From IMG/VR virus record IMGVR_UViG_3300027749_002876, positions 434,001-498,000 of that record: DNA of 64,000 nucleotides. One strand, given 5' to 3'. Shown here piece after piece: positions 3,632 through 37,862 of the stretch. Each line of letters opens with the position of its first letter. The stretch's first letter is position 1. Both the position numbers and the translations under genes were made by a program. The notes under the pieces were generated by a model, which saw only the letters and a list, made by a program, of their open reading frames with translations, did no database searches and was not told the DNA's origin.

Positions 3632-3657
3632 AAATGCCCCTTAATTGGGGCATTTTT
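3630..3657. terminator. bidirectional intrinsic terminator between convergent genes
   Basis: AAAAATGCCCC-TTAATT-GGGGCATTTTT perfect inverted repeat. Confidence 0.85.
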
Positions 3658-4495: not shown

Positions 4496-5233
4496 TTATA
4501 AACCAAATCTTGCTTTGTTAGCATTCCAGCTGGTAGTAACTCCTGACTGACCAATAGCATTATCATATACTTTGACAATGGCCAATCGGCCGCCCCAGAA
4601 CCCACCTGAATCCCAACGAGTCATCAATCCATACCCGATTCCAGGGTTGGCAGCGGCACCGGGTGGAGCATTGGCCGTCTGTACCAGGGTGTTGTTTACA
4701 TACAAGTTGAGAGTAGTGCCATTAAATGTGCCCACAATCTGATACCAGGCACCGGGTGTTAGTGAGTACCCAGACGGAGTAGTTTGAAATCCCGCACTAT
4801 AATACCATGCCTGTAAATCAGTATCAGCACCGTTGGCACCCAGTCCAAGATTGATAGTGCCGCCGCCGTATGGGTATTCTGTGAATATGTTGGGGCCAGC
4901 AGAAGTATTAGTACCATCATAGTAATGCCACGCTTCAATACTCCAGTTAGCAAGTGTACCTAAGTTTGTAGGGCTGGCTGCATACTGTCCTGAACCAGGA
5001 TCGAACTGTATGTATCCACCGTTGGCACTGTTGTATGTGGGACCATTAACAAGAGTAAATGTCATTGATCCAATGGTGTCAGTCCAGGTAGAGTAGCCCC
5101 CTGCTCCAGGATAACTTGCAGGGTTGCCTGCATCTAAACTCAACAATAAGTTCGCAACAGGGCCTGCGCTACCTATGTCGATACCGCCCCCGATATCTAT
5201 TCCTTCGCCTATTCTTATTCCCGGTGCTACCAT
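4496..5233 (-). CDS. LamG/concanavalin-A-like domain protein with Gly-patterned N-terminal leader
   Basis: LLLSLDAGNPASYPG, WSIEAW, WYQIVGTFNGTTLNLYVNN, WNANKARFGL; N-term GIRIGEGIDIGGGIDIG. Confidence 0.85.
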   Translation of the reverse strand: MVAPGIRIGEGIDIGGGIDIGSAGPVANLLLSLDAGNPASYPGAGGYSTWTDTIGSMTFTLVNGPTYNSANGGYIQFDPGSGQYAASPTNLGTLANWSIEAWHYYDGTNTSAGPNIFTEYPYGGGTINLGLGANGADTDLQAWYYSAGFQTTPSGYSLTPGAWYQIVGTFNGTTLNLYVNNTLVQTANAPPGAAANPGIGYGLMTRWDSGGFWGGRLAIVKVYDNAIGQSGVTTSWNANKARFGL

Positions 5234-5270: not shown

Positions 5271-6776
5271 TTATAGTTTTGTATAACCATAACTAACAAC
5301 AGCGTTAGCACCGCTGTTGTTAGTGATACCAAATGTAAATACATTGGCTGTGTTGCCTGAGTAAGGTGCCGCATTGCTAATTACACCCTGTGTTCCAACA
5401 AACTGATTTGGTATTGATGTAAGTACTAATGCATTTCCTGCTAAATAATACCAACCATATTGTTCACCTAGCACTGGTACATTTGTATTTGTAACGACCG
5501 CAGTAGCAGTATATGTTATAATACCGTTTGGAATATTACCGTTAATCCAAATTGAGTAAGTGCCACTTGTTGGAACATTAATATTCGCTGTGTTAACTCC
5601 AGGTGTAAGTGTCCAATTACCTGTTGTTTGTGTAGGAATACCAGTAAGTTGACTTCCATTACCAATAAAGTTGTTAGCAGTCACATTCCCTGCAACGCTT
5701 ATTGTGTTACCGTATGTAACTTCTTTGCTAGTAGCATTGTAGAACATAACTTCAGCAATATTTGAAGTATCATTGCGGACTGGTGATACTGTGAATGTAT
5801 TGGCTGTTGTTTGATCCAACGGATTACCAGTAGCATTCAATATGATTGAATTGTTGCCTTGATTAACGTTACCAGCTTTTGCACCAATTGCTATAGATTG
5901 CTGACCTTGGCCTTGATTACCGGCCTTAAAGCCAATAGCTATTGCTTCAATACCTTGTATATTAGCTCCAGTGTCTGTACCAATGGCCACTGCGGCTTGG
6001 CCTTGACCATTACCACCAGCACCTGCTCCAATTGCTATTGAAATAAAACCCTGGTTGTTTTCGCCTGCGTCAATTCCAATTGCTACTGCACTATTGCCTT
6101 GCGTGTTTGAGCCAGCATTTTGACCTATAGCTAGTTTTGTAGGCCCATTAGTATTGTTAATATTACCAATATTAGCCCAGTCCGTGTTACCACCAAAGCC
6201 ACCTGTATAAGCAGTGGTTTGAACTGAACTATCAGGGAATGATATACTACCGTTAGCATTAAAGTCCCATAGATTAGGACCACTGTTGCCACCATTTTGT
6301 CCTACTGCTATTCTAACAATACCTGACCCTACTGTAGGATTGGTATATACTGCCGCTATGTTACTACTGCCGATACCGCCGATATTTTCTACCCAGAGAC
6401 TTGATGTACCACCGTTACTACCACTTGATATTGATAGTAATGGTAGATCAGGATTCGATTGTAATAATGCAACATTTGATCCAAATACACTAGTGTTGCC
6501 TGTTATTACAAGATTACCCGGGATAGTTAAGTTACCAGTATTGTCAAAACTCCAAGTGCTTGTATTAGCAGTAATTTGAGTTGTATTAGGAGAAGTAATA
6601 CTTACCGAAACATTACCTTGGAGCACGAGGCTAGTATCTTCATAAACTGATGAATCACCGGACCAAGTAATACTTTGAGATATGTTCATAGCATATACAT
6701 TTGCGATATTACCCGTAATGTTTCCTGCTGTAGTAAATCCACCGTCTGATGTGATTGGTATTAAATTTGCTGACAT
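5271..6776 (-). CDS. tail-fibre/adhesin-like protein with YadA-head-like 14-aa repeats
   Basis: G/N/T-rich; tandem AIAIG-xAG-xxQG repeats; WSFDNTGNLTIP motif shared with the next gene. Confidence 0.7.
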   Translation of the reverse strand: MSANLIPITSDGGFTTAGNITGNIANVYAMNISQSITWSGDSSVYEDTSLVLQGNVSVSITSPNTTQITANTSTWSFDNTGNLTIPGNLVITGNTSVFGSNVALLQSNPDLPLLSISSGSNGGTSSLWVENIGGIGSSNIAAVYTNPTVGSGIVRIAVGQNGGNSGPNLWDFNANGSISFPDSSVQTTAYTGGFGGNTDWANIGNINNTNGPTKLAIGQNAGSNTQGNSAVAIGIDAGENNQGFISIAIGAGAGGNGQGQAAVAIGTDTGANIQGIEAIAIGFKAGNQGQGQQSIAIGAKAGNVNQGNNSIILNATGNPLDQTTANTFTVSPVRNDTSNIAEVMFYNATSKEVTYGNTISVAGNVTANNFIGNGSQLTGIPTQTTGNWTLTPGVNTANINVPTSGTYSIWINGNIPNGIITYTATAVVTNTNVPVLGEQYGWYYLAGNALVLTSIPNQFVGTQGVISNAAPYSGNTANVFTFGITNNSGANAVVSYGYTKL

Positions 6777-6797
6777 TTTTATTTTTCCTTATTCTTA

Positions 6798-9700
6798 TTA
6801 ATCTTGTGGTATACCAAACTCTGTTGCATCGTATGTTATATAAGCTGGTTTAGAGCCTGAGTTAATTGTTAATGTAATCTGCATAACACCTGAACCATTC
6901 AAGTTAACCAACACAGTAGTATCTGTGATTGTAGGTGGCTTAAGTCTATTACTTACTGAGTAATAAGTATCACTACCTGTATAGGTCGCTGACACATCAA
7001 ACATCTCAATTCTGAATCCTGAGTGTTGAACTTGAACCGTTACTTTCATTGAAGTTATTGCACTACTAGTTGCAGTGTACACTACAGTTGGGTCCGGGAA
7101 AGCACTATTAATAATTGCGCTCCAATGGTATGGTGGAATAATCTTACGCTGACTACGGATTGTAGTCTGCTCGGTCAATCCAACATCTAATACAGTAACT
7201 GGTAAGGTCAAGTTACCATCTGCACCAAATGTCCAACCTTGAGTTGTTCCACCAGTATTAGCACTAATATACACATCTGTATTAGCATACAGTTGTATCG
7301 TGTCTTTCTGAAGGTACAAGGCTGTTGTATCATTATTAGTAGTACCAAGATATGCTGTGTTAGGGCCATCAGTAACCATATCAAGTCGAGAATACCCTGC
7401 TCCAACTATAGCTTTTGGTACAGTCAAGTTACCATCAGAAACAAAGTTCCATATATGGAATGTAGACGGGCTAACTGAAGTAATAGCTACATTAGCCGGT
7501 ATAGTAGTACCTACTACTGAAGGGAATACCCAATCACCTACTACAGTATTTCCATTACTATCACATGGTCGAAGTGAAAATGTATTTGGACTACCTGGGA
7601 ATTGTACATATACATAAGTGTTAAGTTGCGTGGTGCTACCATTAGACCATGTTGTAGCAACTATTGTTTCTGGCGCTATGCCGGCTGTAACTAATGCATT
7701 ATATAAAGTACTATCAGTAAATATAATTTTTGTAAATCCAGTATTGTTATATGTATTACCAACTATTGATCCAGGACTTGCTACCACTGCATTAGCTAAG
7801 TCACTAACTTGTATAGTAACTCCACCGTCGTAACTTACTTCTGCATTATTTTTTATAGTGCTGTTAGCTGGTAATGTTAAGTTACCATCCACACCAAATG
7901 TCCACTGTGCTGAGTTGCTGATGAAATCAGAAGTACCAATTTTTACGTTGCCGTCAGCTTCCAGTTTTACAAACTTGCTGTCGTCGCCAAAGTATTGATC
8001 GTAATAACGGTTGTTGCCCGTATCTAAATGTATGTGTGAAGCAACATCACCACCACGAACTCTTAAGTATTGTAGATTTGCTGTGCTGTCTAGTCCAGGA
8101 GCTAGATACAATCCGCCACTGCCATCATTGCTTCCGGTGCCTACTACCACTTGGTCGTCAAATGTCACATTACCTGTGTTAGCACCACCGCCTCCACCAT
8201 ATGGGCTACCATTAGCATAGTTGATGCTAGGAGTTCCTGTGGGTAATGTTAGATTACCATCTATGCCAAATTTCCACTCATTATCGGTTGATGTGTTATT
8301 ATTAAAATGCCGTATCGTAAATCCTACATTACTGGTATATGCCCAAGTATAATAATCACTACCATCGTAGGGATTACCATTTCCTATGTTGCCATTCCAA
8401 TATAATTGTGCAAATCTGGTGTTCCCACCGGCATTCAAACTTGCGACATTACTAGAGTCCGAAATAGTGGCATCATTTGGTAATGTTAAGTTACCATCTC
8501 CGCCAAATGTCCAAACACCACCTTGAGTATTAGTATTAACATCCCAAGACTGTATATAAACATTGCCGTCCCAACTTGTCATTACATTAGATTGCTCGTC
8601 TTTACCTAATATAAGATTTGCACTTGCGCTAGCAACAAGGTGAATGTCTGGACCAGATGATATGAAGATATCTAAATATGAACCAGCGTTAGCAGGATCT
8701 GGTTGTAAGTTTAAGTTACCTGTGCCAATGATATTAATGTCATTGAATGTGATATTACCTGTGTTAGCATTGCCACCACCGCCATATGGACTACCATTAG
8801 CGTAATTGATACTTGATGTATTACTTGGTAATGTTAGATTGCCGTCACCGCCAAATGTCCAAGCATTACCGTTTGAAATAATAGATGAATTGTTTGCTAT
8901 GGTTCCAATATAAAGTGCTTCAGCAAGTGTACCTGAATTTGCAACTTGTAGCAACAACTCTGTGCCCGGAATTAAAGTTAGTGGATCAGTACTTGGTGTA
9001 AAGTTACCAGTGTAAACTGCTGTACCAACAACATAACGCATATTTGTTATTAAACCAACGTACTGCGAATTTATACTTTCAGTACCTGTTGTACCATCTA
9101 CTGTTGGGCTACCGATGCTTAGGAAATAACCGTTTGCAGGATCGTAAGCAATATCATCTGGTATGGAAACAGAATTAAATGCTACACCGTCCTGATAGAT
9201 AGTTACTGTACCTGATGAACGAACTACAGCAATATGTTGCCAAACGTTTAATGTATTATTCCAACCAGAGAAGGGATTATAACCAGATTGTGTCTGTATT
9301 GCTATATTGTTAGAGCCACCTTCAAATAACCCCACTAACAAACTATTAATGTTACCACAGCAAATACCAAGACTGAATGGTCTTGGATATCCATGACCAT
9401 CGCTAGTTACATATTGATACCATTCAATGGTAAAGTCACCTGTGCCAGGAGCAAATCTTGCTTCATTGGGTACTACTAAGAAATGATTTAATTCGTCACC
9501 TGCGAATTCTAAACTACCACCACTACTTAATGGAGAAGCACTATTATAGGCAACGTTGCCTATATTGTTCATTGTGACAGATATATTTCCTGTAGTACTA
9601 GAATAAGGTAATGTTAGGTTACCATCTGTGCCAAATGCCCATTGATTGCTGTTAGTTCTGTCACTGACAACAAAATTATTATCACCATTTCCAAGAATAC

Positions 9701-11294
9701 CAAAATCCCATTGTTGGGTAGCATTGGATTGATCTTGCACTGACAAGTAAGCACTGCGTGGTGTGTTATAAAAAACGTTGTCTGCATATCCAGTTATTTG
9801 AATAGCGGGCCCAGCAACAATTCCAAAGTCAGTGCTTTCTACTCTAGGTGCAAGTATTTGCATGTAAGGTGAGTAATCAACCCGTTGTTGATATGCGTTA
9901 GTTCCATTCAATGTTGGCATTCCATTGCTGTCAAACTGTAGTGTACTATAGGTATCTCCGGGTGTGCCGCCTTGATTAGAGAAATTTCCTTGCCAGTTGA
10001 ACTGTGCTGCACCAGAACTTCCAGCCGGAGTACCTAATGGTACTTGTGTACCGTTGGCATAGTTAACAGCAAATGTATTAGCAGGTAATGTTAAGTTACC
10101 ATCAGCATCAAATGTCCATGTATGTGAGTTAGCACTATAATTTGTACCAATATATGCATTGCTAGCATCTACCCACATCCAAGTGTTTTCGGGGTTACCA
10201 CTGTTTGGACCAATTGTGATACCAGTATAATTTAACTCACCGGTACCAGGTACACCCCGTAGAGTTGATCCATTGATAATACTTTGATCGGGGAGATGAA
10301 GAACACCGTTTGTATCTAAGTTTAAGGTATAGTGTTGAGTAGGTTGAGTAAGATTTGTACTGTACAAGTTACTTGTACTGACTTGATTGTTGCTGTTAAG
10401 TACAAAACCATTGCCCAAAGCCATAATACCCGGTGTTGAGTTATTTGCAATGGGAACATTTTCACCTAATTGTACAGGATCACCGTTAGCATAATTGACA
10501 GCAAATGTATTGCTTGGCAATGTTAAATTACCACTAGCACTAAAATTCCATGTCTGTACATTTTGACTATTGCCAATATTACCTGCTAATAAAGTGATAT
10601 CGCCATATGTATTATATAATGATACTGCGTTACCGTCACCTTGTATAGGAATACTCATCCCTGCAGTTTGACCATTACCTAAATCTGAATTGTTTACAAC
10701 AACACCGCCGTTAGAATAAATGACATTGTTATCAAATCCTATGTTACCTAGACCAGGGCCACTTGAGACATTAGACCAAACTAATGCTCCTGAACCATTA
10801 GTACTTAACACTTGTCCATTTGTACCACCTTCAATGTGAACATTGGAAACATCACCTAAATTAGTAGCACCTATTACATTTAAATTGCCTGCACTTAAAT
10901 CACCATCATATGATGTTAAAAAGTCTGCAACATTACTATTACCATATGAATTATTATTTGTAACTTTGTAATTGTTAATTGTTTGATTGACAGCACTAAC
11001 AGAAATTTGTTTTTCAGTATTATATACTGTTACAATGTCATTGGAATCATTATTATTTGAAGATACAATAAACAGTTCAGTACCTGAACTAGCTTGTGTA
11101 GCTTGATTGTATGTTGTTGTATCTCCGGACGTTTTGGGAGCAATACCCCTAGTTACCGTACCACCAGTACTTGTTGCTGTACCATTAGCAGAAACTGTAG
11201 GGGGAGATGTTCTTGCTACTGAAGGTGTTTGATTTTCAAATGATTTTGCTAGTGCCGGATCAGCAGGTCCAACTAGTTTTGGTGATGTAGCCAT
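6798..11294 (-). CDS. large modular tail-fibre-like protein with embedded LamG domain
   Basis: 1498 aa; nine W-x-F-x-x-(D/S)-GNLT(L/V)P motifs separate unrelated modules; LamG segment FAPGTGDFTIEW...WQHIAVVRSSG. Confidence 0.8.
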   Translation of the reverse strand: MATSPKLVGPADPALAKSFENQTPSVARTSPPTVSANGTATSTGGTVTRGIAPKTSGDTTTYNQATQASSGTELFIVSSNNNDSNDIVTVYNTEKQISVSAVNQTINNYKVTNNNSYGNSNVADFLTSYDGDLSAGNLNVIGATNLGDVSNVHIEGGTNGQVLSTNGSGALVWSNVSSGPGLGNIGFDNNVIYSNGGVVVNNSDLGNGQTAGMSIPIQGDGNAVSLYNTYGDITLLAGNIGNSQNVQTWNFSASGNLTLPSNTFAVNYANGDPVQLGENVPIANNSTPGIMALGNGFVLNSNNQVSTSNLYSTNLTQPTQHYTLNLDTNGVLHLPDQSIINGSTLRGVPGTGELNYTGITIGPNSGNPENTWMWVDASNAYIGTNYSANSHTWTFDADGNLTLPANTFAVNYANGTQVPLGTPAGSSGAAQFNWQGNFSNQGGTPGDTYSTLQFDSNGMPTLNGTNAYQQRVDYSPYMQILAPRVESTDFGIVAGPAIQITGYADNVFYNTPRSAYLSVQDQSNATQQWDFGILGNGDNNFVVSDRTNSNQWAFGTDGNLTLPYSSTTGNISVTMNNIGNVAYNSASPLSSGGSLEFAGDELNHFLVVPNEARFAPGTGDFTIEWYQYVTSDGHGYPRPFSLGICCGNINSLLVGLFEGGSNNIAIQTQSGYNPFSGWNNTLNVWQHIAVVRSSGTVTIYQDGVAFNSVSIPDDIAYDPANGYFLSIGSPTVDGTTGTESINSQYVGLITNMRYVVGTAVYTGNFTPSTDPLTLIPGTELLLQVANSGTLAEALYIGTIANNSSIISNGNAWTFGGDGNLTLPSNTSSINYANGSPYGGGGNANTGNITFNDINIIGTGNLNLQPDPANAGSYLDIFISSGPDIHLVASASANLILGKDEQSNVMTSWDGNVYIQSWDVNTNTQGGVWTFGGDGNLTLPNDATISDSSNVASLNAGGNTRFAQLYWNGNIGNGNPYDGSDYYTWAYTSNVGFTIRHFNNNTSTDNEWKFGIDGNLTLPTGTPSINYANGSPYGGGGGANTGNVTFDDQVVVGTGSNDGSGGLYLAPGLDSTANLQYLRVRGGDVASHIHLDTGNNRYYDQYFGDDSKFVKLEADGNVKIGTSDFISNSAQWTFGVDGNLTLPANSTIKNNAEVSYDGGVTIQVSDLANAVVASPGSIVGNTYNNTGFTKIIFTDSTLYNALVTAGIAPETIVATTWSNGSTTQLNTYVYVQFPGSPNTFSLRPCDSNGNTVVGDWVFPSVVGTTIPANVAITSVSPSTFHIWNFVSDGNLTVPKAIVGAGYSRLDMVTDGPNTAYLGTTNNDTTALYLQKDTIQLYANTDVYISANTGGTTQGWTFGADGNLTLPVTVLDVGLTEQTTIRSQRKIIPPYHWSAIINSAFPDPTVVYTATSSAITSMKVTVQVQHSGFRIEMFDVSATYTGSDTYYSVSNRLKPPTITDTTVLVNLNGSGVMQITLTINSGSKPAYITYDATEFGIPQD

Positions 11295-14972: not shown

Positions 14973-15449
14973 TTACTTCTTTAGTATTGACCAAACCTTC
15001 TCTTTTTCAATGATTTCTTGTTCTAATTCTTTATAGCGTTTGCCCAATTCTTTTAACTCATCCCACTTATCTTCTAGTTTAGGATTTGGGTGAAGAATTG
15101 CTAATCGTTCTTCAATCTTATCTAACATGTCAGTAAGGCTTTTGCCCTTGATAGTTACATCACCTTCAAAATCAGCATCACCTTTAACACTAAGTGTGCT
15201 TCCCTGTAAATCAGGATCAGCTAATGATATATTAGACCAACTGCCACCTGTTGTATTTGTAGTATATACTTGCCCAGAACTGCCGCTATTTACTCCCCAA
15301 TATATACCACTTGAACCGGTTGAAGTGCCGGATATATTACTAACAGTATATGTAGGTGAACTACTCGAACCGGTTAAGGTAATCGTATCTATGGAGTCGC
15401 TAGACATTATTGCGCTAGCCATCATTGTATCATTACTAGGAATTGTCAT
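14973..15449 (-). CDS. hypothetical protein, Ser/Thr-rich N-terminus and coiled-coil C-terminus
   Basis: 158 aa; ATGA-coupled to the AbrB-like gene. Confidence 0.7.
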   Translation of the reverse strand: MTIPSNDTMMASAIMSSDSIDTITLTGSSSSPTYTVSNISGTSTGSSGIYWGVNSGSSGQVYTTNTTGGSWSNISLADPDLQGSTLSVKGDADFEGDVTIKGKSLTDMLDKIEERLAILHPNPKLEDKWDELKELGKRYKELEQEIIEKEKVWSILKK

Positions 15450-15631
15450 AGTTTTTTAAGTATAATTCTGCCTTTATCATCAATTGAAAAGTCAATATCA
15501 TCTCCCTCTTTCCAACCCAATTGTTTTAATAAACTTGGTGGAATAGGTATAAGCATGTCGCCAGTGTCTGGATCTTCTTGTGTGATAACTTCATAGCTAT
15601 CATAACTCTGTGCTGGATTTTTTTTAGGCAT
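15446..15631 (-). CDS. AbrB/MazE/SpoVT-like DNA-binding protein
   Basis: IPIP--LLKQLGWKEGD-I-F-----RIILKK. Confidence 0.8.
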   Translation of the reverse strand: MPKKNPAQSYDSYEVITQEDPDTGDMLIPIPPSLLKQLGWKEGDDIDFSIDDKGRIILKKL

Positions 15632-16765: not shown

Positions 16766-17518
16766 TTATGGGTGCAAGGTGCTATAGGTAACTGCACCAG
16801 CGTTTGTAACTGTGAGAGCATTATTACTCGTATCAGTTATATAAGTACCAGCAGATGCAACTGCTAACAATAATTGAGTTGAAGTGCCTGTGATTGTCGC
16901 ACTAGGTGAACCGTTGATATTGGCGCTTTGTGTAGCAGTTAGAGGCGTAGTTGACGGTGTAAAGTTTGAAGTATAAACTGCCAGCCCCTTAACAATTCTC
17001 ATGCTGGTCATGTAACCATTGAATGGGTTATTGTTTTGATTGGCACTCCATCCAATTTCTAAACTTCTATTGGTGTTGGAATTATACACACTGGTAGAAG
17101 TCAATACCGAGATGCCACCCACATACACTGTGACTGTGCCACTGGCCCTAACCAAAGCAACATGTTGCCATATTCCTGCTGTGACAACTCCATCGGAACT
17201 ACCAGGGTATGCACTGCCACTATAATAATTGAGTTTGCCATTATTGTTGAGATCAAGATTGTCACTATTGGATCCAAACCACCATAATCTTTGACTTACA
17301 GTGACTGACGTAGGATTTATCCAAGTTTCTACGGTATAATCACCGGTGCCAAAAGCAAATGCAGACCCTGCTGTAACAGAAGAAATTACTAATTCATTAT
17401 TGGCACCTGCGTTAGTTCCATTAAAAAATAAACTGCCGGTAAATGAAGAAATACTATCAGTAGTTAATGAAATGCCTGGTCCAATGTTAATTCCTCCACC
17501 AATTTGTATTCCTGCCAT
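16766..17518 (-). CDS. stand-alone LamG-domain protein with Gly-patterned N-terminal leader
   Basis: FGTGDYTVETW, WQHVALVRASG, GLAVYTSNFTPSTTPLT; N-term GIQIGGGINIGPGISL. Confidence 0.85.
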   Translation of the reverse strand: MAGIQIGGGINIGPGISLTTDSISSFTGSLFFNGTNAGANNELVISSVTAGSAFAFGTGDYTVETWINPTSVTVSQRLWWFGSNSDNLDLNNNGKLNYYSGSAYPGSSDGVVTAGIWQHVALVRASGTVTVYVGGISVLTSTSVYNSNTNRSLEIGWSANQNNNPFNGYMTSMRIVKGLAVYTSNFTPSTTPLTATQSANINGSPSATITGTSTQLLLAVASAGTYITDTSNNALTVTNAGAVTYSTLHP

Positions 17519-17604: not shown

Positions 17605-17766
17605 ATGAGTTGGTTCAAGCACAAACCCAGAACAAAAACACCCCCAAAATTACATGTATATCATACAAGTCCTATAGCAGAAAAACTATTAAAAGAGACA
17701 AAACTTGAAGTCACTGGTGTAAAAGCCAAGTTAGCAGAAGTAGAGAAAAAGAAAAATGAACGGTAG
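17605..17766 (+). CDS. small basic hypothetical protein, 53 aa
   Basis: AAAGGAG RBS before ATG 17605 (track start 17548 is likely too long). Confidence 0.55.
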   Translation: MSWFKHKPRTKTPPKLHVYHTSPIAEKLLKETKLEVTGVKAKLAEVEKKKNER

Positions 17767-17929
17767 AGAACTACAACAAATGTATCAACAATGGTGTCAA
17801 GGAAATGATGATTACAATTTTCGTTGGTTAGATTTTGTTGAGATGGCCGCAAGACAGTTTCAGCAACCTGAAAGTGAAGTCATTAGAGAGTTACAGAAAC
17901 ATTATTGGTTTGTAAAAAACAATAAGTAG
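17756..17929 (+). CDS. hypothetical protein, 57 aa, not in the ORF track
   Basis: MNGRELQQMYQQWCQGNDDYNFRWLDFVEMAARQF...; fills the gap. Confidence 0.55.
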   Translation: MNGRELQQMYQQWCQGNDDYNFRWLDFVEMAARQFQQPESEVIRELQKHYWFVKNNK

Positions 17930-17938
17930 ATTTATTGA

Positions 17939-17944
17939 TAAATA
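17939..17944 (+). promoter_or_regulatory. late-promoter-like TAAATA; further copies at 18904, 20136 and 20887 precede other genes of this cluster
   Basis: TAAATA in four successive intergenic gaps; resembles the T4 late promoter TATAAATA. Confidence 0.6.
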
Positions 17945-17968: not shown

Positions 17969-18874
17969 ATGGAATTCAGTGGAATGACAATAAGTGGTGG
18001 GGTTTCTATTGTGCCTCCCCCTCCCTCAAATAAGGCTATATTTGGTTATGGTTATCCCACCTATTCAATAACTAACTTAGTATCAATCACAGGTGTAGTT
18101 GCTACTAATACAACTGGTGTTGGTACCGGTAGACATGGTTTAGCAGCCGCAACTTATGGTACTGATAAAGCTATATTTGGTTATGGTAATGACACTAATA
18201 TCAGGCTATCAATGACCAATCTTGTATCAAATACAGGTGTAGTTGCTACAGATACAACAGGTGTTGGTACTGCTAGAAATAATTTAGCAGCCACAGGTTA
18301 TGGCACTGATAAAGCTATTTTTGGTTATGGATATATTGGCTCAGCTACATCAATAACTAATCTAGTAAGTAATGCAGGTGTAGTAGCAACTGATACTGCA
18401 GGTGTTGGCACTGCTAGGTACGCAAGAGCAGCCACAACTTATGGCAGTTCTGGACAAGCTATATTTGGATATGGTAATGGTCCTGTATCAGTAACCAATC
18501 TAGTATCAAGTACAGGTATAGTAGCTACTGATACAACCGGTGTTGGTACCGCTAGATCCGACCTTGCTGCCGCAGGGTATGGTACCGATAAAGCTATTTT
18601 TGGATATGGCGCCACTAGCAGTAATACTGCAATAACTAATCTAGTAAGTAACACCGGCGTAGTCGCAACTGACACAACAGGTGTAGGCACTGCTAGGAGT
18701 AGTCTAGCAGCCGCGGGGTATAGTAGTGATAAAGCTATTTTTGGATATGGTGATAATTCAGGTGCTTTATCAATGACCAATCTAGTAAGTAATACCGGTG
18801 TTGTTGCTACTGATACTGCAGGTGTCGGTACTGCTAGATTGGCGTTAGCAGCCGCAAGTTACGGCCTCAGTTAA
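17969..18874 (+). CDS. six-blade Kelch-like beta-propeller repeat protein (paralog A)
   Basis: Six copies of (K/Q)AIFGYG-loop-xxTNLVSxxGxVATxTxGVGTxR-xx-xAAxxYG; ends with the closing strand LAAASYGLS. Confidence 0.75.
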   Translation: MEFSGMTISGGVSIVPPPPSNKAIFGYGYPTYSITNLVSITGVVATNTTGVGTGRHGLAAATYGTDKAIFGYGNDTNIRLSMTNLVSNTGVVATDTTGVGTARNNLAATGYGTDKAIFGYGYIGSATSITNLVSNAGVVATDTAGVGTARYARAATTYGSSGQAIFGYGNGPVSVTNLVSSTGIVATDTTGVGTARSDLAAAGYGTDKAIFGYGATSSNTAITNLVSNTGVVATDTTGVGTARSSLAAAGYSSDKAIFGYGDNSGALSMTNLVSNTGVVATDTAGVGTARLALAAASYGLS

Positions 18875-18931
18875 AAATACAATTAACTTATTAGAGTTAG
18901 AGATAAATACATTATCATAAAGGAGAATATA

Positions 18932-19147
18932 ATGATAGACTTAGAAAACATGCCTGCTCCAACACAAGAGCAAATCGCAGAAGCAAGAGAAAACGCATTC
19001 AATGCAGAGCATCCAGCATCATGGACATGGAATGAAGAAGCAACTTCATATGTTGCTCCAGTAAGTGTTCCAAATGATGGCTATCCTTATTTATGGGATG
19101 AAGCTACAACTAATTGGACACCATTTCCAGATTATCCTAGAGAGTAA
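18932..19147 (+). CDS. small Trp/Pro-rich protein (possible fibre-assembly accessory)
   Basis: HPASWTWNEE----VAP--VP-DG-PYLWDEATTNW; strong AAGGAG RBS. Confidence 0.7.
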   Translation: MIDLENMPAPTQEQIAEARENAFNAEHPASWTWNEEATSYVAPVSVPNDGYPYLWDEATTNWTPFPDYPRE

Positions 19148-19153
19148 TCTTTA

Positions 19154-20101
19154 ATGCAATTCAGTGGAATGACAATATCGGGTGGGATAACGGTAGTTTA
19201 TATCCCTCCTCCCTCAAACAAGGCTATATTTGGATACGGCGTCAATAATGCCGATAGTATGGTTTCAATTACAAACCTAGTATCAAACACTGGTGTTGTT
19301 GCGACTGATACTGCAGGTGTCGGTACTGGTAGGCGAAACCTAGGCGGTGCAGGTTATGGTACTGATAAAGCTATCTTTGGATATGGGCAAACTAGTAGTT
19401 TATTATTCTCACTGACCAATCTTGTAAGTAATACAGGAGTAGTTGCCACAGATACAGCAGGTGTTGGTACTGCTAGAAGTAATCTTGCGGCTGCTGGGTA
19501 TGGTGGTGATAAAGCTATATTTGGATATGGGGCAAATCTCAATCAAGATGTGATGTATTCATTAACTAATTTGGTATCAAACACTGGTGTAGTTGCTACA
19601 GATACTACAGGCGTTGGTACTAGTAGATTCCAACTGGCAGCCGCAGGTTATGGTACTGATAAAGCTATCTTTGGATATGGGTACAATAGTAGTTTTACTC
19701 CACTTTCAATTACTAACCTAATAAGTAATACCGGTGTAGTTGGTAATGATGTTACTGGTGTTGGAACTGCTAGAACTGCACTAGCGGCTACTGGATATGG
19801 CACTGATAAAGCTATTTTTGGATACGGATACGCAGGAGGCGTTCAATCAATAACTAACCTAGTATCAAATACAGGCGTAGTGGCCAGTAATACAACAGGT
19901 GTAGGTACTGCTAGATATAACCTTGCGGCCGCAGGTTATGGTGTTGATACTGCTATTTTTGGATATGGAGTTGGTCCTGCAAGTCCACCGTATCTATCAA
20001 TGACCAACCTAGTATCAAACACAGGGATAGTCGCAACAGATACCACAGGTGTAGGTACTGCTAGATACGGATTGGCAGCCGCTAGTTACGGGTTATCATA
20101 A
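19154..20101 (+). CDS. six-blade Kelch-like beta-propeller repeat protein (paralog B)
   Basis: Six copies of the same repeat; same N-terminal leader FSGMTISGG. Confidence 0.75.
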   Translation: MQFSGMTISGGITVVYIPPPSNKAIFGYGVNNADSMVSITNLVSNTGVVATDTAGVGTGRRNLGGAGYGTDKAIFGYGQTSSLLFSLTNLVSNTGVVATDTAGVGTARSNLAAAGYGGDKAIFGYGANLNQDVMYSLTNLVSNTGVVATDTTGVGTSRFQLAAAGYGTDKAIFGYGYNSSFTPLSITNLISNTGVVGNDVTGVGTARTALAATGYGTDKAIFGYGYAGGVQSITNLVSNTGVVASNTTGVGTARYNLAAAGYGVDTAIFGYGVGPASPPYLSMTNLVSNTGIVATDTTGVGTARYGLAAASYGLS

Positions 20102-20170
20102 ACCCTAAAAATTTTTACTCACACAAATTAGCTAATAAATATCTCTATACACAACCTATAGAGAGAAAAA

Positions 20171-20839
20171 ATGGCATCAAATCTAAATTCAGAATTTAAC
20201 TACCGTTACCAGGTGATCGGTTCAACACCCTGGGAAAAAATCAAAACACTTCAAGGCTTCTATGTAGGTCGCAAACGAGCGGCCGTACTAGAAGAAGTGG
20301 CTGAATTAAAATATCAAGCTAAACTTGAAGAACTAAAACATCTAAAAACAGTTCCAGCACTACCGCATATTATGCTTAATCTACAAGCAGAAATCATTGA
20401 GTTGGAATCACACTTGGATGACCAAAAACATGCTTTCGAACTTAATCGCAAAGAGATTAAAATATTAGAAAAATACATGGCTGAACTTTATGCTGAAGTT
20501 GAACCAACAAGACTTAAGCATCCAGATGGTACACCGTATACCGATGATGAGATGTTTGAAGCTAATGCTAACTATGAATTCACAGTCACAGTTGGTCGTG
20601 AGATTCAATCGGAAATCATTGCAATGGGTAGACCTAGTCCAGCTAAACTACTCAATGCTATGAGTAATCCACAAACATTAAATTCATTAATGCAAATTGG
20701 TCTTGTACCACAAGGTACTATATTACTAGAGCAGAAAGATATTATGTTAGAATTAACTAATCAATCAACTACAACAGTAATGGATGCACCAAAAGAATTA
20801 GAAAGTAACACTTCTAAGAAGAAAACAAAGAAAAAGTAA
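20171..20839 (+). CDS. coiled-coil hypothetical protein
   Basis: 222 aa, helical heptad pattern, basic C-terminal tail. Confidence 0.75.
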   Translation: MASNLNSEFNYRYQVIGSTPWEKIKTLQGFYVGRKRAAVLEEVAELKYQAKLEELKHLKTVPALPHIMLNLQAEIIELESHLDDQKHAFELNRKEIKILEKYMAELYAEVEPTRLKHPDGTPYTDDEMFEANANYEFTVTVGREIQSEIIAMGRPSPAKLLNAMSNPQTLNSLMQIGLVPQGTILLEQKDIMLELTNQSTTTVMDAPKELESNTSKKKTKKK

Positions 20840-20861
20840 TAGTATAATACTTACAGAAAAG

Positions 20862-20884
20862 AGGCTCACTATGAGCCTTTTTTT
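20862..20884 (+). terminator. intrinsic terminator
   Basis: AGGCTCA-CTA-TGAGCCT followed by a T run. Confidence 0.8.
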
Positions 20885-20911
20885 GATAAATAAGTTGAAG
20901 GAAGATATATT

Positions 20912-21283
20912 ATGTCAATAACGATAACAGGTGGTTTTACATTGGCTGGTGGTGGATGGACTGTTGCTCCCGCACCACCTACAGGTAATAAAGCTATCTT
21001 TGGATACGGTAGCAATGGATCTAATGTGTCAATGACTAACCTAGTAAGTAATGCAGGTATTGTTGCTGCTGACACTACTGGAGTAGGTACTGCTAGACGT
21101 TATCTAGCAGCCGCAGGTTATGGTACTGATAAAGCTATATTTGGTTATGGAACTATTGCTGGTAATCTTGGGGATACCTATTCACTAACTAACCTAGTAT
21201 CAAACACGGGTGTAGTAGCTACAAATACTGCTGGTGTAGGTACTGCCAGATACAGCCCTTCGGCTGCAGCCTACAGCTCATAA
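20912..21283 (+). CDS. two-blade Kelch-like repeat protein (paralog C)
   Basis: Two KAIFGYG repeats plus closing strand PSAAAYSS; own TAAATA upstream. Confidence 0.7.
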   Translation: MSITITGGFTLAGGGWTVAPAPPTGNKAIFGYGSNGSNVSMTNLVSNAGIVAADTTGVGTARRYLAAAGYGTDKAIFGYGTIAGNLGDTYSLTNLVSNTGVVATNTAGVGTARYSPSAAAYSS

Positions 21284-21357: not shown

Positions 21358-21672
21358 ATGAAATATCTACTACTCGCCGTATCCTTAGGAATAACAAACA
21401 TCTCCTATTCGCAAAAACTAGAACAAACAATAAAAGCTGAATTACCTTGTTATGATACAACAGAACTCTTTAAAAGTCTTAGAGAGAAATTCAAAGAACT
21501 ACCTTTACTAACAGGCAAAGCAGATGATGAAGCAAACTCAACAATGAGTCTTTGGTTGAATCCTGTTGATAACAATTGGACAATAATCGCAACTAAGAAA
21601 GAACTAAGTTGTGTTGTTGGAGCTGGAACTGATATGAAAATTATCTCAACCAGAAAAGGAACAAATGTATGA
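21358..21672 (+). CDS. secreted hypothetical protein
   Basis: Signal-peptide-like N-term; two Cys; extended -10 TGTTATAAT at 21331-21339; ATGA-coupled to the peptidase. Confidence 0.7.
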   Translation: MKYLLLAVSLGITNISYSQKLEQTIKAELPCYDTTELFKSLREKFKELPLLTGKADDEANSTMSLWLNPVDNNWTIIATKKELSCVVGAGTDMKIISTRKGTNV

Positions 21673-22406
21673 TTAAAAAACTGTTAGTAATATTAACACT
21701 GGTAACAAGTTCTGTATATGCTGACCAAACATTAACAGCACAAGCTTGGCTAGTAGCCGATCACAATGGAAAAATACTTGAAGGTTCCAACACAACAGAA
21801 ATTCGTAGTATAGCAAGTATCACTAAACTAATGACTTCAATGGTTGTACTAGATGCAGGACAATCACTCACAGAAATCATTCCAAAAAAATTATACAACA
21901 AGCAACTAACCAGAGAAACACTAATTGATTTGGCAATTGTAAAATCAGACAACAATGCTGCCAAACTATTATGTGATTACTATCCGGGAGGATATGACAG
22001 TTGTATCATAGCAATGAATAACAAAGCACATTCATTACAAATGAATCAATCAACATTTACTGATCCAACTGGCAGGATGCATACAAATGTAAGTACTGCG
22101 GAAGATTTGATTAAGTTAGTATTTGCGGCAAGTACATACCCACTCATAGTTCAAGCAAGTAATATGGATGCAGTACGTTGGAACGTCAATAAGAAGAAAA
22201 ATGTTGAGTTAAGAAACACTAACACTTTAGTAGGACATGGTTATAAATTCCTAGTCAGTAAGACAGGATTTATCAACAAAGCAGGTGGATGTATCGTTAT
22301 GATGATTGATACTGTATATGGTATCAGAACAGTTGTATTGTTAGGAAGTAAAAATACAAAGACCCGTATCCCTGAAGCACAGATGCTATCGCAGGTTATT
22401 CGATAA
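21669..22406 (+). CDS. D-alanyl-D-alanine carboxy/endopeptidase, S11 family (PBP7-like)
   Basis: Signal peptide; SITK (SxxK), SDN (SxN), KTG motifs. Confidence 0.9.
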   Translation: MIKKLLVILTLVTSSVYADQTLTAQAWLVADHNGKILEGSNTTEIRSIASITKLMTSMVVLDAGQSLTEIIPKKLYNKQLTRETLIDLAIVKSDNNAAKLLCDYYPGGYDSCIIAMNNKAHSLQMNQSTFTDPTGRMHTNVSTAEDLIKLVFAASTYPLIVQASNMDAVRWNVNKKKNVELRNTNTLVGHGYKFLVSKTGFINKAGGCIVMMIDTVYGIRTVVLLGSKNTKTRIPEAQMLSQVIR

Positions 22407-37796: not shown

Positions 37797-37862
37797 TTTT
37801 TCTCCTTTATAAAGCAAGATTCTAATTTCAGACCCGATAATCGGCATCTGAGTACATATTTA
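37797..37862 (-). promoter_or_regulatory. TAAATA promoter plus ROSE-like RNA thermometer leader of dnaK
   Basis: TAAATA 37862-37857; mRNA UCAGAU-G-CCGA-UUA-UCGG-GUCUGA hairpin, then CUU(G)CUU-UAUA-AAGGAG. Confidence 0.7.

What the first reader, a model, noticed from the sequence alone, without database searches (positions are those of the whole stretch)
17969..21283. Kelch-like propeller family with a constant scaffold and hypervariable binding-face loops
Seen: 14 blades across three paralogs keep a nearly invariant scaffold. Variation concentrates at two sites: the loop after AIFGYG (YPTY, NDTNIRL, YIGSAT, NGPV, ATSSNT, DNSGAL, VNNADSMV, QTSSLLF, ANLNQDVMY, YNSSFTPL, YAGGVQ, VGPASPPYL, SNGSNV, TIAGNLGDTY) and the two residues after GTxR (HG, NN, YA, SD, SS, LA, RN, SN, FQ, TA, YN, YG, RY, YS). 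Known: in Kelch domains the R-x-x (d-a) loop and the loop after the Gly pair form the same ligand-binding face. Inference: a receptor repertoire in which recombination between about 130-bp homologous blades shuffles binding loops. The paralogs are interleaved with a Trp/Pro-rich 71-aa gene and a 222-aa coiled-coil gene, most with their own late motif, suggesting a co-assembled virion appendage.
Basis: partly seen in the sequence, partly recalled or inferred. Interest (0 to 1): 0.8.

Follow-up and report, generated by a model that had tools for sequence, protein, structure and literature searches.

The report
Swappable phage propeller binding modules
Three neighbouring genes of an uncultured freshwater giant phage encode six-bladed (one only two-bladed) propeller proteins whose framework is almost frozen while the loops on one face differ in every copy and every strain, which is how a virus would be expected to build interchangeable host-recognition heads.

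Summary
ORFs 17969-18874, 19154-20101 and 20912-21283 hold 6+6+2 repeats of 45-50 aa. Scaffold identity is 84%; identity at the two variable sites is 12%.

A low-confidence AlphaFold model is a six-bladed propeller. Its best solved-structure matches are Keap1 Kelch domains (TM 0.67-0.72). No Kelch profile matches. The only sequence link is a weak one to Photorhabdus PLL/PHL propeller lectins.

The family is large, with 751 clusters at 50% identity, and is essentially viral. The propeller sits at the C-terminus, often behind fibre or adhesin modules. It lies in hypervariable islands next to tail-fibre and neck genes.

In closely related strains the promoters, the ~22-aa N-terminal tags, the 71-aa gene and the 222-aa gene are 94-100% identical. 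The propeller bodies drop to 54-74% with sharp breakpoints, so whole propellers are exchanged as cassettes. Whole-blade duplications or deletions occur between otherwise identical alleles. Loop shuffling inside this window is not seen. Loop dN/dS is about 0.9 against 0.25 for the scaffold, so positive selection is not shown.

Best reading: interchangeable receptor-binding (probably glycan-binding) heads that work with two conserved partner genes. Virion location and ligand are inferred. The 222-aa partner has no recognisable fold.

The parts
17938..17944 (+). late-promoter-like ATAAATA motif 25 nt upstream of propeller gene A
   Evidence: 15 of 26 occurrences in the window lie 1-45 nt upstream of a same-strand start (0.94 expected)
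17969..18874 (+). propeller gene A, 301 aa: N-terminal tag (17969-18034) plus six blades (18035-18871)
   Evidence: N-tag HMM E=1.9e-12
18903..18909 (+). ATAAATA motif 23 nt upstream of the 71-aa gene
18932..19147 (+). W71: conserved 71-aa Trp/Pro-rich partner gene
   Evidence: 83-90% identical in L001 and L093; 78% mean column identity over 20 homologues with invariant W/P/D/G; present in 37 of 64 loci; no PDB, Pfam or NCBIfam match
19154..20101 (+). propeller gene B, 315 aa: N-terminal tag (19154-19222) plus six blades; starts 6 nt after W71, so probably co-transcribed
20135..20141 (+). ATAAATA motif 30 nt upstream of the 222-aa gene
20171..20839 (+). T222: highly conserved 222-aa all-helical partner gene of unknown fold; the constant element of the island
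   Evidence: 85% identical in L001, 60% in a podovirus-like contig; 76% mean column identity; at least 4693 clusters, none named; AF2 pLDDT 73.6, long helices 20-60 and 65-113; no structural match
20862..20878 (+). G+C-rich hairpin followed on the + strand by a T-run: terminator-like site between T222 and gene C
   Evidence: the scan lists it on the - strand; the + strand sequence read shows the hairpin followed by seven T
20886..20892 (+). ATAAATA motif 20 nt upstream of gene C
20912..21283 (+). propeller gene C, 123 aa: N-terminal tag plus only two blades, with a normal C-terminal closing strand
   Evidence: positional counterparts in close strains have six blades (304 and 315 aa); an independent complete 2-blade gene exists at L057:9450-9830
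16766..17518 (-). 250-aa concanavalin-A-like (Laminin_G_3) ORF at the left edge of the variable island; Gly-rich N-terminus resembling the tag
   Evidence: Pfam 6.7e-18; replaced by a 201-aa or a YHYH-domain ORF, or absent, in close strains; N-tag HMM only marginal, E=0.023
17756..17929 (+). 57-aa ORF: conserved left border of the island
   Evidence: 95% aa identity to L093, present in L015
21358..21672 (+). 104-aa ORF: conserved right border of the island
   Evidence: 95% aa identity, 93-98% nt identity to L093

Best explanation
A, B and C are members of a large, phage-specific family of six-bladed beta-propeller modules. They most likely serve as exchangeable receptor-binding heads, probably glycan-binding, in a host-recognition island.

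Each blade is a four-strand meander. Strand A is LAAAGY, B is AIFGYG, C is SxTNLV and D is VVATD. The chain starts with strand B of blade 1 and ends with a strand A that closes the ring.

One face carries the hypervariable B-C loops and the two residues that end the D-A loop, next to an invariant Arg. This face is proposed to contact the ligand. The opposite face (turns GTDK and SNTG) and the core are nearly invariant. They are proposed to dock on conserved partners, for which the always-adjacent T222 and W71 proteins are the candidates.

A short conserved N-terminal tag (Gly-rich strand-turn-strand, then a Pro run) is proposed to anchor the module. The same tag is used by lectin-like, fibronectin-type and Gly-rich proteins in sister islands.

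Shown:
- anatomy of the repeats;
- propeller fold, at low model confidence;
- a viral family with the propeller at the C-terminus;
- fusion to fibre and adhesin modules;
- position next to fibre and neck genes;
- cassette replacement with sharp breakpoints;
- whole-blade copy-number changes.

Inferred:
- presence in the virion;
- identity of the ligand;
- docking on T222 and W71;
- trimerisation of the two-blade protein C into a six-blade ring.
For: - Fold. AF2 model of B has four strands per repeat, pTM 0.58. The top 50 PDB matches are Kelch or Kelch-derived designed six-blade propellers, led by Keap1 at TM 0.67-0.72, probability 1.0. An independent BFVD model of a 64%-identical uncultured-phage protein matches at TM 0.79/0.80. 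The family profile weakly hits the PLL2 and PHL lectins, E 0.0045 and 0.007, and there are precomputed faint Beta-prop_PLL hits.
- Family. More than 2370 proteins at 90% clustering and 751 clusters at 50%. There are only 6 loci in 185,579 species genomes, all MAG contigs.
- Architecture. The propeller ends the protein in proteins up to 1653 aa. N-terminal partners are Laminin_G_3 (16 of 60), fn3, SBBP, cadherin, He_PIG, Phage_min_tail, PTR, Mtd_N and collagen.
- Context. The genes lie after giant fibre-like genes. In L019 they lie between a tail-fibre protein and gp13/gp14/gp15-like neck genes. This matches the hypervariable host recognition cluster described for pelagimyophages (PMC7029224).
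- Cassette exchange. Against strain L093, the N-tags, W71, T222 and flanks are 94-100% nt identical. Propeller bodies are 54-74%, with breakpoints at the tag/blade-1 junction and after the last blade. Scaffold dS is 0.8-1.1 against 0.13-0.34 in the flanks. Island content differs among strains whose T222 is 98-99% identical.
- Constraint. dN/dS is 0.25 in the scaffold and 0.87 at variable sites, Fisher p = 2.5e-7. There are 997 distinct loops in 1161 blades, and Tyr is 21% of residues at R+1.
- Linkage. 59 of 64 T222 loci have a propeller within two genes.
- Late motif.
Against: - There is no direct evidence that the proteins are in virions or bind anything.
- The propeller model is low confidence (pLDDT 58.7), and coordinates could not be inspected. 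The face assignment rests on strand order.
- Loop dN/dS is not above 1 (p = 0.74), so loop variability could be relaxed constraint rather than selection for new specificities.
- Nothing was found in cultured phages, so no host or phenotype is known.
- T222 gave no structural or sequence clue, so the docking role is conjecture.
- Five-blade alleles exist. A strict six-fold docking model does not explain them.
- Two metagenome contigs from two data sets are identical to the window over 12.7 kb, so there is no rapid within-population hypervariation.
Confidence: 0.6

Rival explanations
1. Multivalent lectin with conserved sites. The ligand is bound by invariant scaffold residues repeated in every blade (the Arg of GTAR, Asp/Thr of DTTG, Asn of TNL, aromatic F/Y). 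This would give six equivalent sugar sites between blades, as in PLL/PHL or fucose-binding propeller lectins. The variable loops would be unconstrained surface, or would only tune binding of extended glycans.
For: - The scaffold is extremely conserved in every blade of every member. This includes polar and surface-turn residues, although synonymous sites are saturated.
- There is a weak profile link to PLL/PHL lectins, whose sites lie between blades and use residues conserved across repeats.
- Loop dN/dS is about 1, as expected for neutral loops.
- Two-blade and five-blade versions would still carry functional sites.
Against: - The Trp pairs that define PLL/PHL sugar sites are absent; the scaffold has no Trp (PMC5584973).
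- If the loops did not matter, wholesale replacement of propeller bodies between strains with sharp breakpoints would not be expected.
- The enrichment of Tyr/Ser/Arg/Asn at R+1, right beside the invariant Arg, would also not be expected.
- The two readings are not exclusive. A conserved pocket with a variable rim is possible.
Confidence: 0.2
2. Head or neck decoration adhesins rather than host-receptor binders. The propellers would hang on the capsid or collar, with T222 as a fibritin-like coiled-coil stalk. They would bind environmental polymers or cell-surface glycans loosely, without determining host range.
For: - In L014 the cassette follows the gp23-like major capsid gene.
- In L001 and L019 it occupies the slot between the fibre gene and the gp13/gp14 neck genes, where T4 carries fibritin (gene order of T4 from general knowledge).
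- T222 is predicted to be long helices.
- The 755-aa island protein of L015 has a weak Hoc-like hit.
Against: - The T222 model is a helical hairpin with no match to fibritin or anything else.
- Propellers also end very long fibre-like proteins and follow tail fibres in a podovirus-like contig.
- No data distinguish the two locations.
Confidence: 0.12
3. Targets of a diversity-generating retroelement or another programmed hypermutation system, with the loops rewritten at high rate within a population.
For: - The scaffold is constant and the positions on one face are hypervariable.
- Some relatives carry the Mtd N-terminal domain.
- The loops are rich in N, S, T, Y and G.
Against: - No reverse transcriptase was found among the window ORFs scanned.
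- No near-identical template/variable repeat pair exists. The best inter-blade identity is 86%, and loops differ in length.
- Two contigs from two data sets are identical over the three genes.
- Differences between strains extend over the whole propeller body, including synonymous scaffold sites.
Confidence: 0.02
4. Intracellular adaptors. Like eukaryotic and poxviral Kelch proteins, the propellers would bind host proteins inside the infected cell, for takeover or counter-defence, and would not be virion parts.
For: - The best fold matches are substrate-adaptor Kelch domains.
- A variable binding face would also suit an arms race with host defence proteins.
Against: - The late-type motif.
- Fusion to fibre, collagen, Mtd_N, phage-tail-repeat and extracellular adhesion domains.
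- Position within structural or host-recognition islands.
- No BTB or other adaptor domain.
Confidence: 0.05

Closest known systems
Kelch-repeat six-bladed propellers (e.g. Keap1 Kelch domain; Pfam Kelch_1-6)
   Same: - Six blades of about 47 aa.
- The same strand order: Arg, strand A, turn, strand B ending in a Gly pair, long B-C loop, strand C, turn, strand D, D-A loop.
- The ring is closed by the C-terminal strand.
- The ligand face is formed by the B-C and D-A loops.
- Best structural matches have TM 0.67-0.72.
   Different: - No Kelch profile hit at E<=1, and 12-16% identity in structural alignments.
- No conserved Trp in strand D.
- Blades are 80-85% identical to one another instead of weakly similar.
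- The family is viral and sits at the C-terminus behind fibre or adhesin modules, not a BTB adaptor.
PLL/PHL seven-bladed propeller lectins of Photorhabdus (Pfam Beta-prop_PLL, PF26607; PDB 6rfz, 5mxe)
   Same: - Repeat length is about 47 aa.
- The G-T-D-x-A-hydrophobic-aromatic turn-strand motif is shared.
- These are the only solved structures reached by the family profile (E 0.0045 and 0.007).
- Some family members have precomputed faint or weak Pfam hits.
- Lectin function would suit a phage adhesin.
   Different: - Six blades, not seven.
- The Trp residues that make the fucose and galactose sites between blades (PMC5584973) are absent.
- In PLL/PHL the binding residues are the conserved ones. 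Here one face is hypervariable.
Host recognition cluster of aquatic T4-like myophages (pelagimyophages and cyanomyophages; PMC7029224)
   Same: It is a hypervariable island in or beside the structural region, next to the neck genes. It is stocked with tail fibres and proteins carrying concanavalin-A-like, YHYH, collagen and Mtd domains. The same domain set surrounds the propellers here.
   Different: - The propeller family, the T222 and W71 partner genes and the shared N-terminal tag are not mentioned there.
- The same cassette also occurs in a podovirus-like contig and in this 524-kb contig.
Modular phage receptor-binding proteins with a conserved N-terminal anchor and exchanged C-terminal head, often followed by an assembly chaperone gene (general knowledge: T-even gp37/gp38, Mu S/U, lactococcal phage RBPs)
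   Same: - The N-terminus is conserved and the C-terminal domain is swapped, with sharp recombination breakpoints.
- A conserved small gene lies immediately downstream of the binding gene.
   Different: - The anchor here is only about 22 aa.
- The exchanged unit is a monomeric-looking propeller rather than a trimeric fibre tip.
- The downstream gene is far more conserved than known fibre chaperones and has no match to them.
Two-blade lectins that trimerise into a six-bladed propeller (RSL of Ralstonia, BambL of Burkholderia; from memory, not tested here)
   Same: Gene C and L057:9450-9830 encode exactly two blades with intact ends, beside six-blade paralogues.
   Different: - No sequence similarity was tested.
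- Oligomerisation is unknown.
- C may simply be a deletion product.
DGR-diversified binding proteins (Bordetella phage Mtd; tentaclins, PMC10743442)
   Same: The concept of a fixed scaffold with a diversified ligand-binding surface in phage receptor-binding proteins. The Mtd_N domain is fused to some relatives.
   Different: - The fold is different.
- No RT or template repeat was found.
- Diversity arises by cassette exchange and blade indels, not adenine mutagenesis.

Membership tests
Kelch repeat family (Pfam Kelch_1-6) | Significant match to a Kelch profile HMM | tested here: not met
   hmmscan of A, B and C against Pfam-A at E<=1 gave no family
Kelch repeat family (Pfam Kelch_1-6) | Signature residues per repeat: Gly doublet after strand B, conserved Tyr and Trp, Arg in the D-A loop (from general knowledge) | tested here: not met
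   G-Y-G and an invariant Arg are present, but no Trp occurs anywhere in the 14 blades
Kelch repeat family (Pfam Kelch_1-6) | Six four-stranded blades of 44-56 aa forming a closed propeller | tested here: met
   6 repeats of 45-50 aa, four strands each in the AF2 model. Keap1 Kelch TM 0.67-0.72. Model confidence is low (pLDDT 58.7), but an independent BFVD homologue model agrees
PLL/PHL propeller lectins (PF26607 Beta-prop_PLL) | Sequence-profile similarity | tested here: inconclusive
   The family profile hits 6rfz at E=0.0045 and 5mxe at E=0.007, with single-stretch E-values above 0.6. PF26607 is on record for some homologues, and the one place where its strength is marked calls it faint. 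The model is absent from the local Pfam copy
PLL/PHL propeller lectins (PF26607 Beta-prop_PLL) | Seven blades | tested here: not met
   Six repeats in 139 of 156 propeller ORFs in fetched loci and in 95 of 120 database hits
PLL/PHL propeller lectins (PF26607 Beta-prop_PLL) | Conserved Trp-based sugar sites between blades | tested here: not met
   PHL sites use Trp residues conserved across repeats (PMC5584973). The scaffold here has none
PLL/PHL propeller lectins (PF26607 Beta-prop_PLL) | Carbohydrate binding | not testable with these tools
   Needs glycan arrays or a co-crystal structure
Phage receptor-binding / tail-fibre distal modules in host-recognition islands | Location beside tail-fibre or other structural genes | tested here: met
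   In relatives: after Mtd_N, collagen and He_PIG giant proteins, and between a tail-fibre protein and gp13/14/15-like genes. In the window itself the island is flanked by non-structural genes, with LamG proteins nearby
Phage receptor-binding / tail-fibre distal modules in host-recognition islands | Conserved N-terminal attachment part with horizontally exchanged C-terminal binding part | tested here: met
   N-tags have dS 0.25-0.32 and 91-97% nt identity against propeller bodies at 54-74%, with sharp breakpoints
Phage receptor-binding / tail-fibre distal modules in host-recognition islands | Late expression | tested here: inconclusive
   A T4-late-like ATAAATA motif lies 20-30 nt upstream of four of the five genes and is enriched upstream of genes. 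There are no expression data
Phage receptor-binding / tail-fibre distal modules in host-recognition islands | Presence in the virion and effect on adsorption or host range | not testable with these tools
   No cultured relative
DGR variable proteins | Nearby reverse transcriptase and a template repeat differing from the variable repeat at adenines | tested here: not met
   No RT among the ORFs scanned (the scan was not exhaustive). The best inter-blade nt identity is 86%, with length differences. Two contigs are identical
Two-blade trimeric propeller lectins (RSL/BambL type), for gene C only | Two blades per chain assembling as a trimer into a six-blade ring | not testable with these tools
   The two blades are confirmed.

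The most novel reading that the evidence does not exclude
The island is a plug-and-play binder system. A pseudo-six-fold propeller scaffold is kept invariant because every blade must dock identically on a conserved symmetric partner, a T222 coiled-coil oligomer, perhaps with W71. This is why two-blade proteins can still assemble as trimers.

The top face would act as a composite paratope made of twelve variable segments.

The conserved tag, W71 and T222 would double as homology arms. They would let unrelated phages (T4-like, podovirus-like, 500-kb) trade ready-made specificities. The result would be a natural, retroelement-free counterpart of an antibody-like repertoire built on a repeat protein.
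Probability: 0.2. Interest if true: 0.85.

Novelty: new variant of a known kind. Interest (0 to 1): 0.6.

Why it matters
Host recognition is the least understood part of uncultured aquatic phages. This work defines a very abundant binding module found only in phages, with a clear separation of a fixed framework from a variable face. It also defines two conserved partner genes and a shared N-terminal tag that together mark host-recognition islands across unrelated phage types.

The module offers three things:
- a marker for finding such islands in metagenomes;
- a tractable case of specificity change by cassette exchange and blade copy-number change, which can be followed in lake time series;
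- a small, repeat-based natural scaffold that tolerates about a thousand different loop sets, which may interest protein engineers.

If the loops prove neutral, it is still a new lectin-like phage family.

Tried and rejected
- **Cultured phages:** megablast of the region and tblastn of B and of T222 against 50,697 GenBank phage records found nothing.
- **W71 in cultured phages:** the only hit is a weak one to the C-terminal part of CRP-207 gp53, in a structural module.
- **Family libraries:** Pfam, PHROGs and NCBIfam gave nothing meaningful for A, B, C, W71 or T222. The NCBIfam hit of B (23 bits against a cut-off of 500) is noise.
- **T222:** the profile against PDB gave only E>0.5. PHROGs gave nothing. 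The large protein database gave at least 4693 unnamed relatives and no Pfam family. The AF2 model (pLDDT 73.6) against PDB had best E=1.3, with only generic helical matches.
- **W71:** the profile against PDB gave nothing.
- **DGR idea:** rejected; see the rival explanations.
- **Gene C as a deletion derivative of the L093 six-blade allele:** BLAST gave two overlapping collinear matches offset by 564 nt, which is four blades. However, C's loops differ from that allele's first and last blades. The offset only reflects the repeats, so the origin of C by deletion is plausible but not shown.
- **Loop mobility:** identical loops of 6-8 aa recur at other blade positions. The blades carrying them are only 77-86% identical in DNA, close to the 78% background. 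This is not evidence of recent shuffling.
- **Positive selection:** pooled pN/pS at variable sites is 0.87, not above 1.

Full report
**1. What is in the sequence**

The region 17969-21283 carries five same-strand ORFs:
- A (17969-18874, 301 aa)
- a 71-aa ORF, here called W71 (18932-19147)
- B (19154-20101, 315 aa)
- a 222-aa ORF, here called T222 (20171-20839)
- C (20912-21283, 123 aa)

Splitting A, B and C at AIFGYG gives 6, 6 and 2 repeats of 45-50 aa. A blade HMM built from the 14 repeats finds only these three ORFs in the 64-kb window.

Entropy across the 14 blades exceeds 2 bits only in the loop after AIFGYG and at the two residues after GTxR. Scaffold identity is 84% at the protein level but 78% at the DNA level. 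Identical residues share a codon only 56% of the time. The longest exact DNA word shared by two blades is 27 nt, with a median of 12. The scaffold is therefore held by purifying selection, not by recent duplication or gene conversion.

**2. Fold**

No Pfam, PHROG or NCBIfam family matches, Kelch included.

An AlphaFold2 model of B, built from a 28-sequence alignment, is of low confidence (pLDDT 58.7, pTM 0.58). It is all-beta with four strands per repeat. Foldseek against the PDB returns Kelch or Kelch-derived designed six-bladed propellers for the top 50, led by Keap1 at TM 0.67-0.72. Against BFVD the best match is an independently modelled, 64%-identical 'uncharacterized protein' of an uncultured Caudovirales phage (TM 0.79/0.80). 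A Kelch-motif protein of Burkholderia phage BcepSaruman follows further down the list (rank 8, TM 0.72).

By sequence profile, the only solved relatives are the seven-bladed Photorhabdus lectins PLL2 and PHL, and the link is weak (E 0.0045 and 0.007). Pfam's Beta-prop_PLL model appears as a precomputed faint hit on some homologues.

The strand order read from the model is:
- B = AIFGYG
- variable loop
- C = SxTNLV
- turn SNTG
- D = VVATD
- loop DTTGVGTAR plus two variable residues
- A = LAAAGY
- turn GTDK

In a four-strand meander the B-C and D-A loops lie at one end of the sheet and the A-B and C-D turns at the other. Both variable sites therefore share a face, and the opposite face is conserved. 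This follows from topology, because coordinates could not be inspected. The protein begins with a strand B and ends with a strand A, the usual ring closure.

**3. The family**

- Size: more than 2370 relatives at 90% clustering, and 751 clusters at 50% identity, of which 358 are below 1e-30.
- Distribution: only six loci in 185,579 species genomes, all on MAG contigs, and none in 50,697 GenBank phage records. The family is viral and uncultured. Record titles suggest lake metagenomes.
- Blade number: six in 139 of 156 propeller ORFs in the fetched loci.
- Architecture: the propeller ends the protein, in proteins up to 1653 aa. N-terminal partners in 60 long representatives are Laminin_G_3 (16), fn3 (6) and SBBP (5), plus cadherin, He_PIG, Phage_min_tail, phage tail repeat, Mtd_N and collagen.
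- Variability: over 1161 blades, the entropy is 2.9-3.8 bits in the loop and 3.6-3.7 bits at R+1/R+2. All but two other columns are under 1.8 bits, and many are near zero. There are 997 distinct loops, and Tyr makes up 21% of R+1.
- Interchangeability: blades 1-5 are interchangeable in scaffold sequence, at 80-83% identity between proteins at any position. Only blade 6 is distinct. Blades within one protein are slightly more alike, at 85%.

**4. Context and partners**

T222 is 85% identical in a T4-like contig (L001). It is 60% identical in a podovirus-like contig (L004), which carries three tandem propeller genes. W71 is 83% identical in L001.

T222 has 189 relatives in IMG/VR. The window is identical to part of a 524,565-bp contig, which carries a second T222 island, and to part of a 78-kb contig.

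Among 64 distinct T222 loci:
- 59 have a propeller within two genes;
- the gene just upstream of T222 is a propeller in 34 and W71 in 15;
- 37 contain W71.

In L019 the cassette lies between a tail-fibre protein and gp13-, gp14- and gp15-like genes. In L014 it follows a gp23-like capsid gene. This matches the hypervariable 'host recognition cluster' of pelagimyophages and cyanomyophages. That cluster is described as holding ConA-like, YHYH, collagen and Mtd-domain proteins (PMC7029224).

T222 is very conserved, at 76% mean column identity, and abundant, with at least 4693 clusters, all unnamed. It is predicted to be helical: 20-60, 65-113, 125-152 and 157-175, at pLDDT 73.6. It has no sequence or structural relative.

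W71 is likewise conserved, with invariant Trp, Pro and Asp-Gly positions. Its only cultured relative is a weak match in the structural module of Roseobacter phage CRP-207.

A 20-25-aa N-terminal tag (Gly-rich strand-turn-strand, then a Pro run) is shared by A, B, C and many propellers. In sister islands it also heads ConA-like, Gly-rich and fn3 proteins, 30 distinct proteins in all.

**5. How it varies**

Strains with the same backbone and 98-99% identical T222 carry different islands:

| Source | Island content |
|---|---|
| Window | A - W71 - B - T222 - C |
| L093 / L095 | P307 - W71 - P308 - T222 - P304 |
| L096 | W71 - P306 - T222 - P315 - P313 |
| L097 / L098 | W71 - P311 - T222 - P315 - P309 |
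| L015 | T222 plus a 755-aa fn3/Gly-rich protein, no propellers |

Against L093, the promoters, N-tags, W71, T222 and border genes are 94-100% identical in DNA. The propeller bodies fall to 54-74%. The breakpoints lie at the tag/blade-1 junction and just after the last blade. Scaffold dS is 0.8-1.1 against 0.13-0.34 in the flanks. The propeller bodies are therefore exchanged as cassettes between conserved flanks.

In nine close allele pairs, pN/pS is 0.87 at variable sites and 0.25 in the scaffold (Fisher p = 2.5e-7). It is not above 1 (p = 0.74). Among alleles at least 99.5% identical, the loops carry five nonsynonymous changes and one indel, while the scaffold carries one nonsynonymous and four synonymous changes.

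Whole-blade copy-number changes do occur:
- L054:2728-3690 (six blades) and L058:2610-3431 (five blades) are identical except for one 47-aa blade. The two copies of that blade are 99% identical in DNA.
- L025 (six blades) and L058/L054 (five blades) differ by exactly one blade, and all the other loops are the same.
- A second complete two-blade gene exists at L057:9450-9830.

It is not supported as the source of loop diversity in this window.

**6. Expression signals**

ATAAATA lies 20-30 nt upstream of A, W71, T222 and C. Of its 26 occurrences in the window, 15 are 1-45 nt upstream of a same-strand start, against 0.94 expected. It resembles the T4-type late promoter (general knowledge). A hairpin with a T-run separates T222 from C.

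**7. Interpretation**

The best-supported reading is that these genes are interchangeable receptor-binding heads of a host-recognition island.
- The variable face, next to an invariant Arg, contacts the ligand.
- The ligand is probably a surface glycan, given the lectin-like relatives and lectin-type neighbours.
- The invariant face and the N-terminal tag serve assembly, with T222 and W71 as the candidate partners.

Virion location, ligand and partner contacts are inferred.

The main rival is a multivalent lectin whose sites are made by the invariant residues, with neutral loops. Loop dN/dS near 1 keeps this rival alive. A conserved pocket with a variable rim would reconcile the two readings. 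Readings based on a DGR or on an intracellular adaptor are poorly supported.

**8. Novelty**

The fold, the lectin-like character and hypervariable host-recognition islands are all known kinds. Four things are not described in the libraries and papers searched:
- this family itself;
- its unusually frozen scaffold, with about a thousand different loop sets;
- the two conserved partner genes and the shared tag;
- the cassette-plus-blade-indel mode of change.

I rate it a new variant of a known kind, of moderate to good interest.

Noticed in passing
window 17969-18034, 19154-19222, 20912-20992; L039:3911-5923 and 6736-7590; L014:8641-9489; L009:4784-5938 and 6739-8295; L015:6752-9019: A short N-terminal tag (M-x-F/I-S/T-G-G-I/M-T-F/L-S-G-G-hydrophobic-x-hydrophobic, then a Pro run) heads the propellers. 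In sister islands it also heads concanavalin-A-like, Gly-rich and fibronectin-type proteins. It occurs on 30 distinct proteins in the fetched loci. It looks like a common docking or targeting signal for swappable domains.
   Followed up: partly
window 20171-20839 and 51 distinct homologues in loci L001-L086: T222 is an orphan. It is very abundant (at least 4693 clusters at 90%) and strongly conserved, with 76% mean column identity across T4-like, podovirus-like and 500-kb contigs. No name, Pfam family or structural relative was found.
   Followed up: yes
L054:2728-3690 versus L058:2610-3431; L025:1743-3023 versus L058:1468-2598: Otherwise identical alleles differ by exactly one 141-nt blade. 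In L054 the two copies are 99% identical. This is population-level blade-number polymorphism by unequal recombination.
   Followed up: yes
L027:771-1890 and L075:1644-2563: Propeller genes are split into two overlapping or adjacent ORFs (2+4 and 3+3 blades). These are either frameshifted pseudogenes or assembly errors within the repeats.
   Followed up: no
whole window; IMG/VR contig of 524,565 bp (L008, L039): The window is identical over the 12.7 kb held for locus L008, a stretch of a 524,565-bp viral contig. That contig carries a second T222 island, with T222 83% identical and flanked by LamG and Gly-rich tagged proteins instead of propellers. Whether this is a true megaphage or a chimeric assembly was not checked.
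   Followed up: no
window 35901-37847 (-): A full-length DnaK/Hsp70 homologue is about 69% identical to bacterial DnaK carried in some phage records and about 53-55% identical to copies in huge uncultured phages.
   Followed up: partly
window 4496-5233 (-), 6798-11294 (-), 16766-17518 (-): Three concanavalin-A-like (Laminin_G_3) proteins, one of 1498 aa, lie within 14 kb upstream of the propellers, next to a papain-family peptidase (3656-4492). This suggests a wider adhesin-rich region.
   Followed up: partly
window, 26 sites (e.g. 13527, 13165, 16756, 17938, 18903, 20135, 20886): ATAAATA is slightly depleted overall (26 found against 35 expected). However, 15 of the 26 copies lie just upstream of same-strand gene starts. 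This is consistent with a T4-type late promoter in this phage.
   Followed up: partly
window 15446-15631 (-): A 61-aa ORF whose orthologue in L093 carries a MazE/AbrB-type (PF04014) hit lies between the 158-aa and NT5C genes. No toxin partner was seen.
   Followed up: no
window 21358-22406 (+): The right border of the island is a 104-aa ORF with a signal-peptide-like start. It is followed by an overlapping D-alanyl-D-alanine carboxypeptidase (Peptidase_S11) gene that also has a hydrophobic N-terminus. These may be cell-wall-acting late genes.
   Followed up: no
L001:10001-14400: Three neighbouring proteins share a different N-terminal motif (R-x-x-G-L-W-P-T). They are a propeller of 333 aa, an Lcl_C-like protein of 343 aa and a Gly-rich protein of 379 aa. 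This is a second anchor type with the same swap logic.
   Followed up: no
L004:7598-12196: In a podovirus-like contig, three tandem propeller genes each start with a ~60-aa module that also occurs towards the C-terminal end (about residues 250-290 of 392) of the upstream fibre protein. This suggests attachment by fibre-to-fibre homology rather than by the Gly-rich tag.
   Followed up: no
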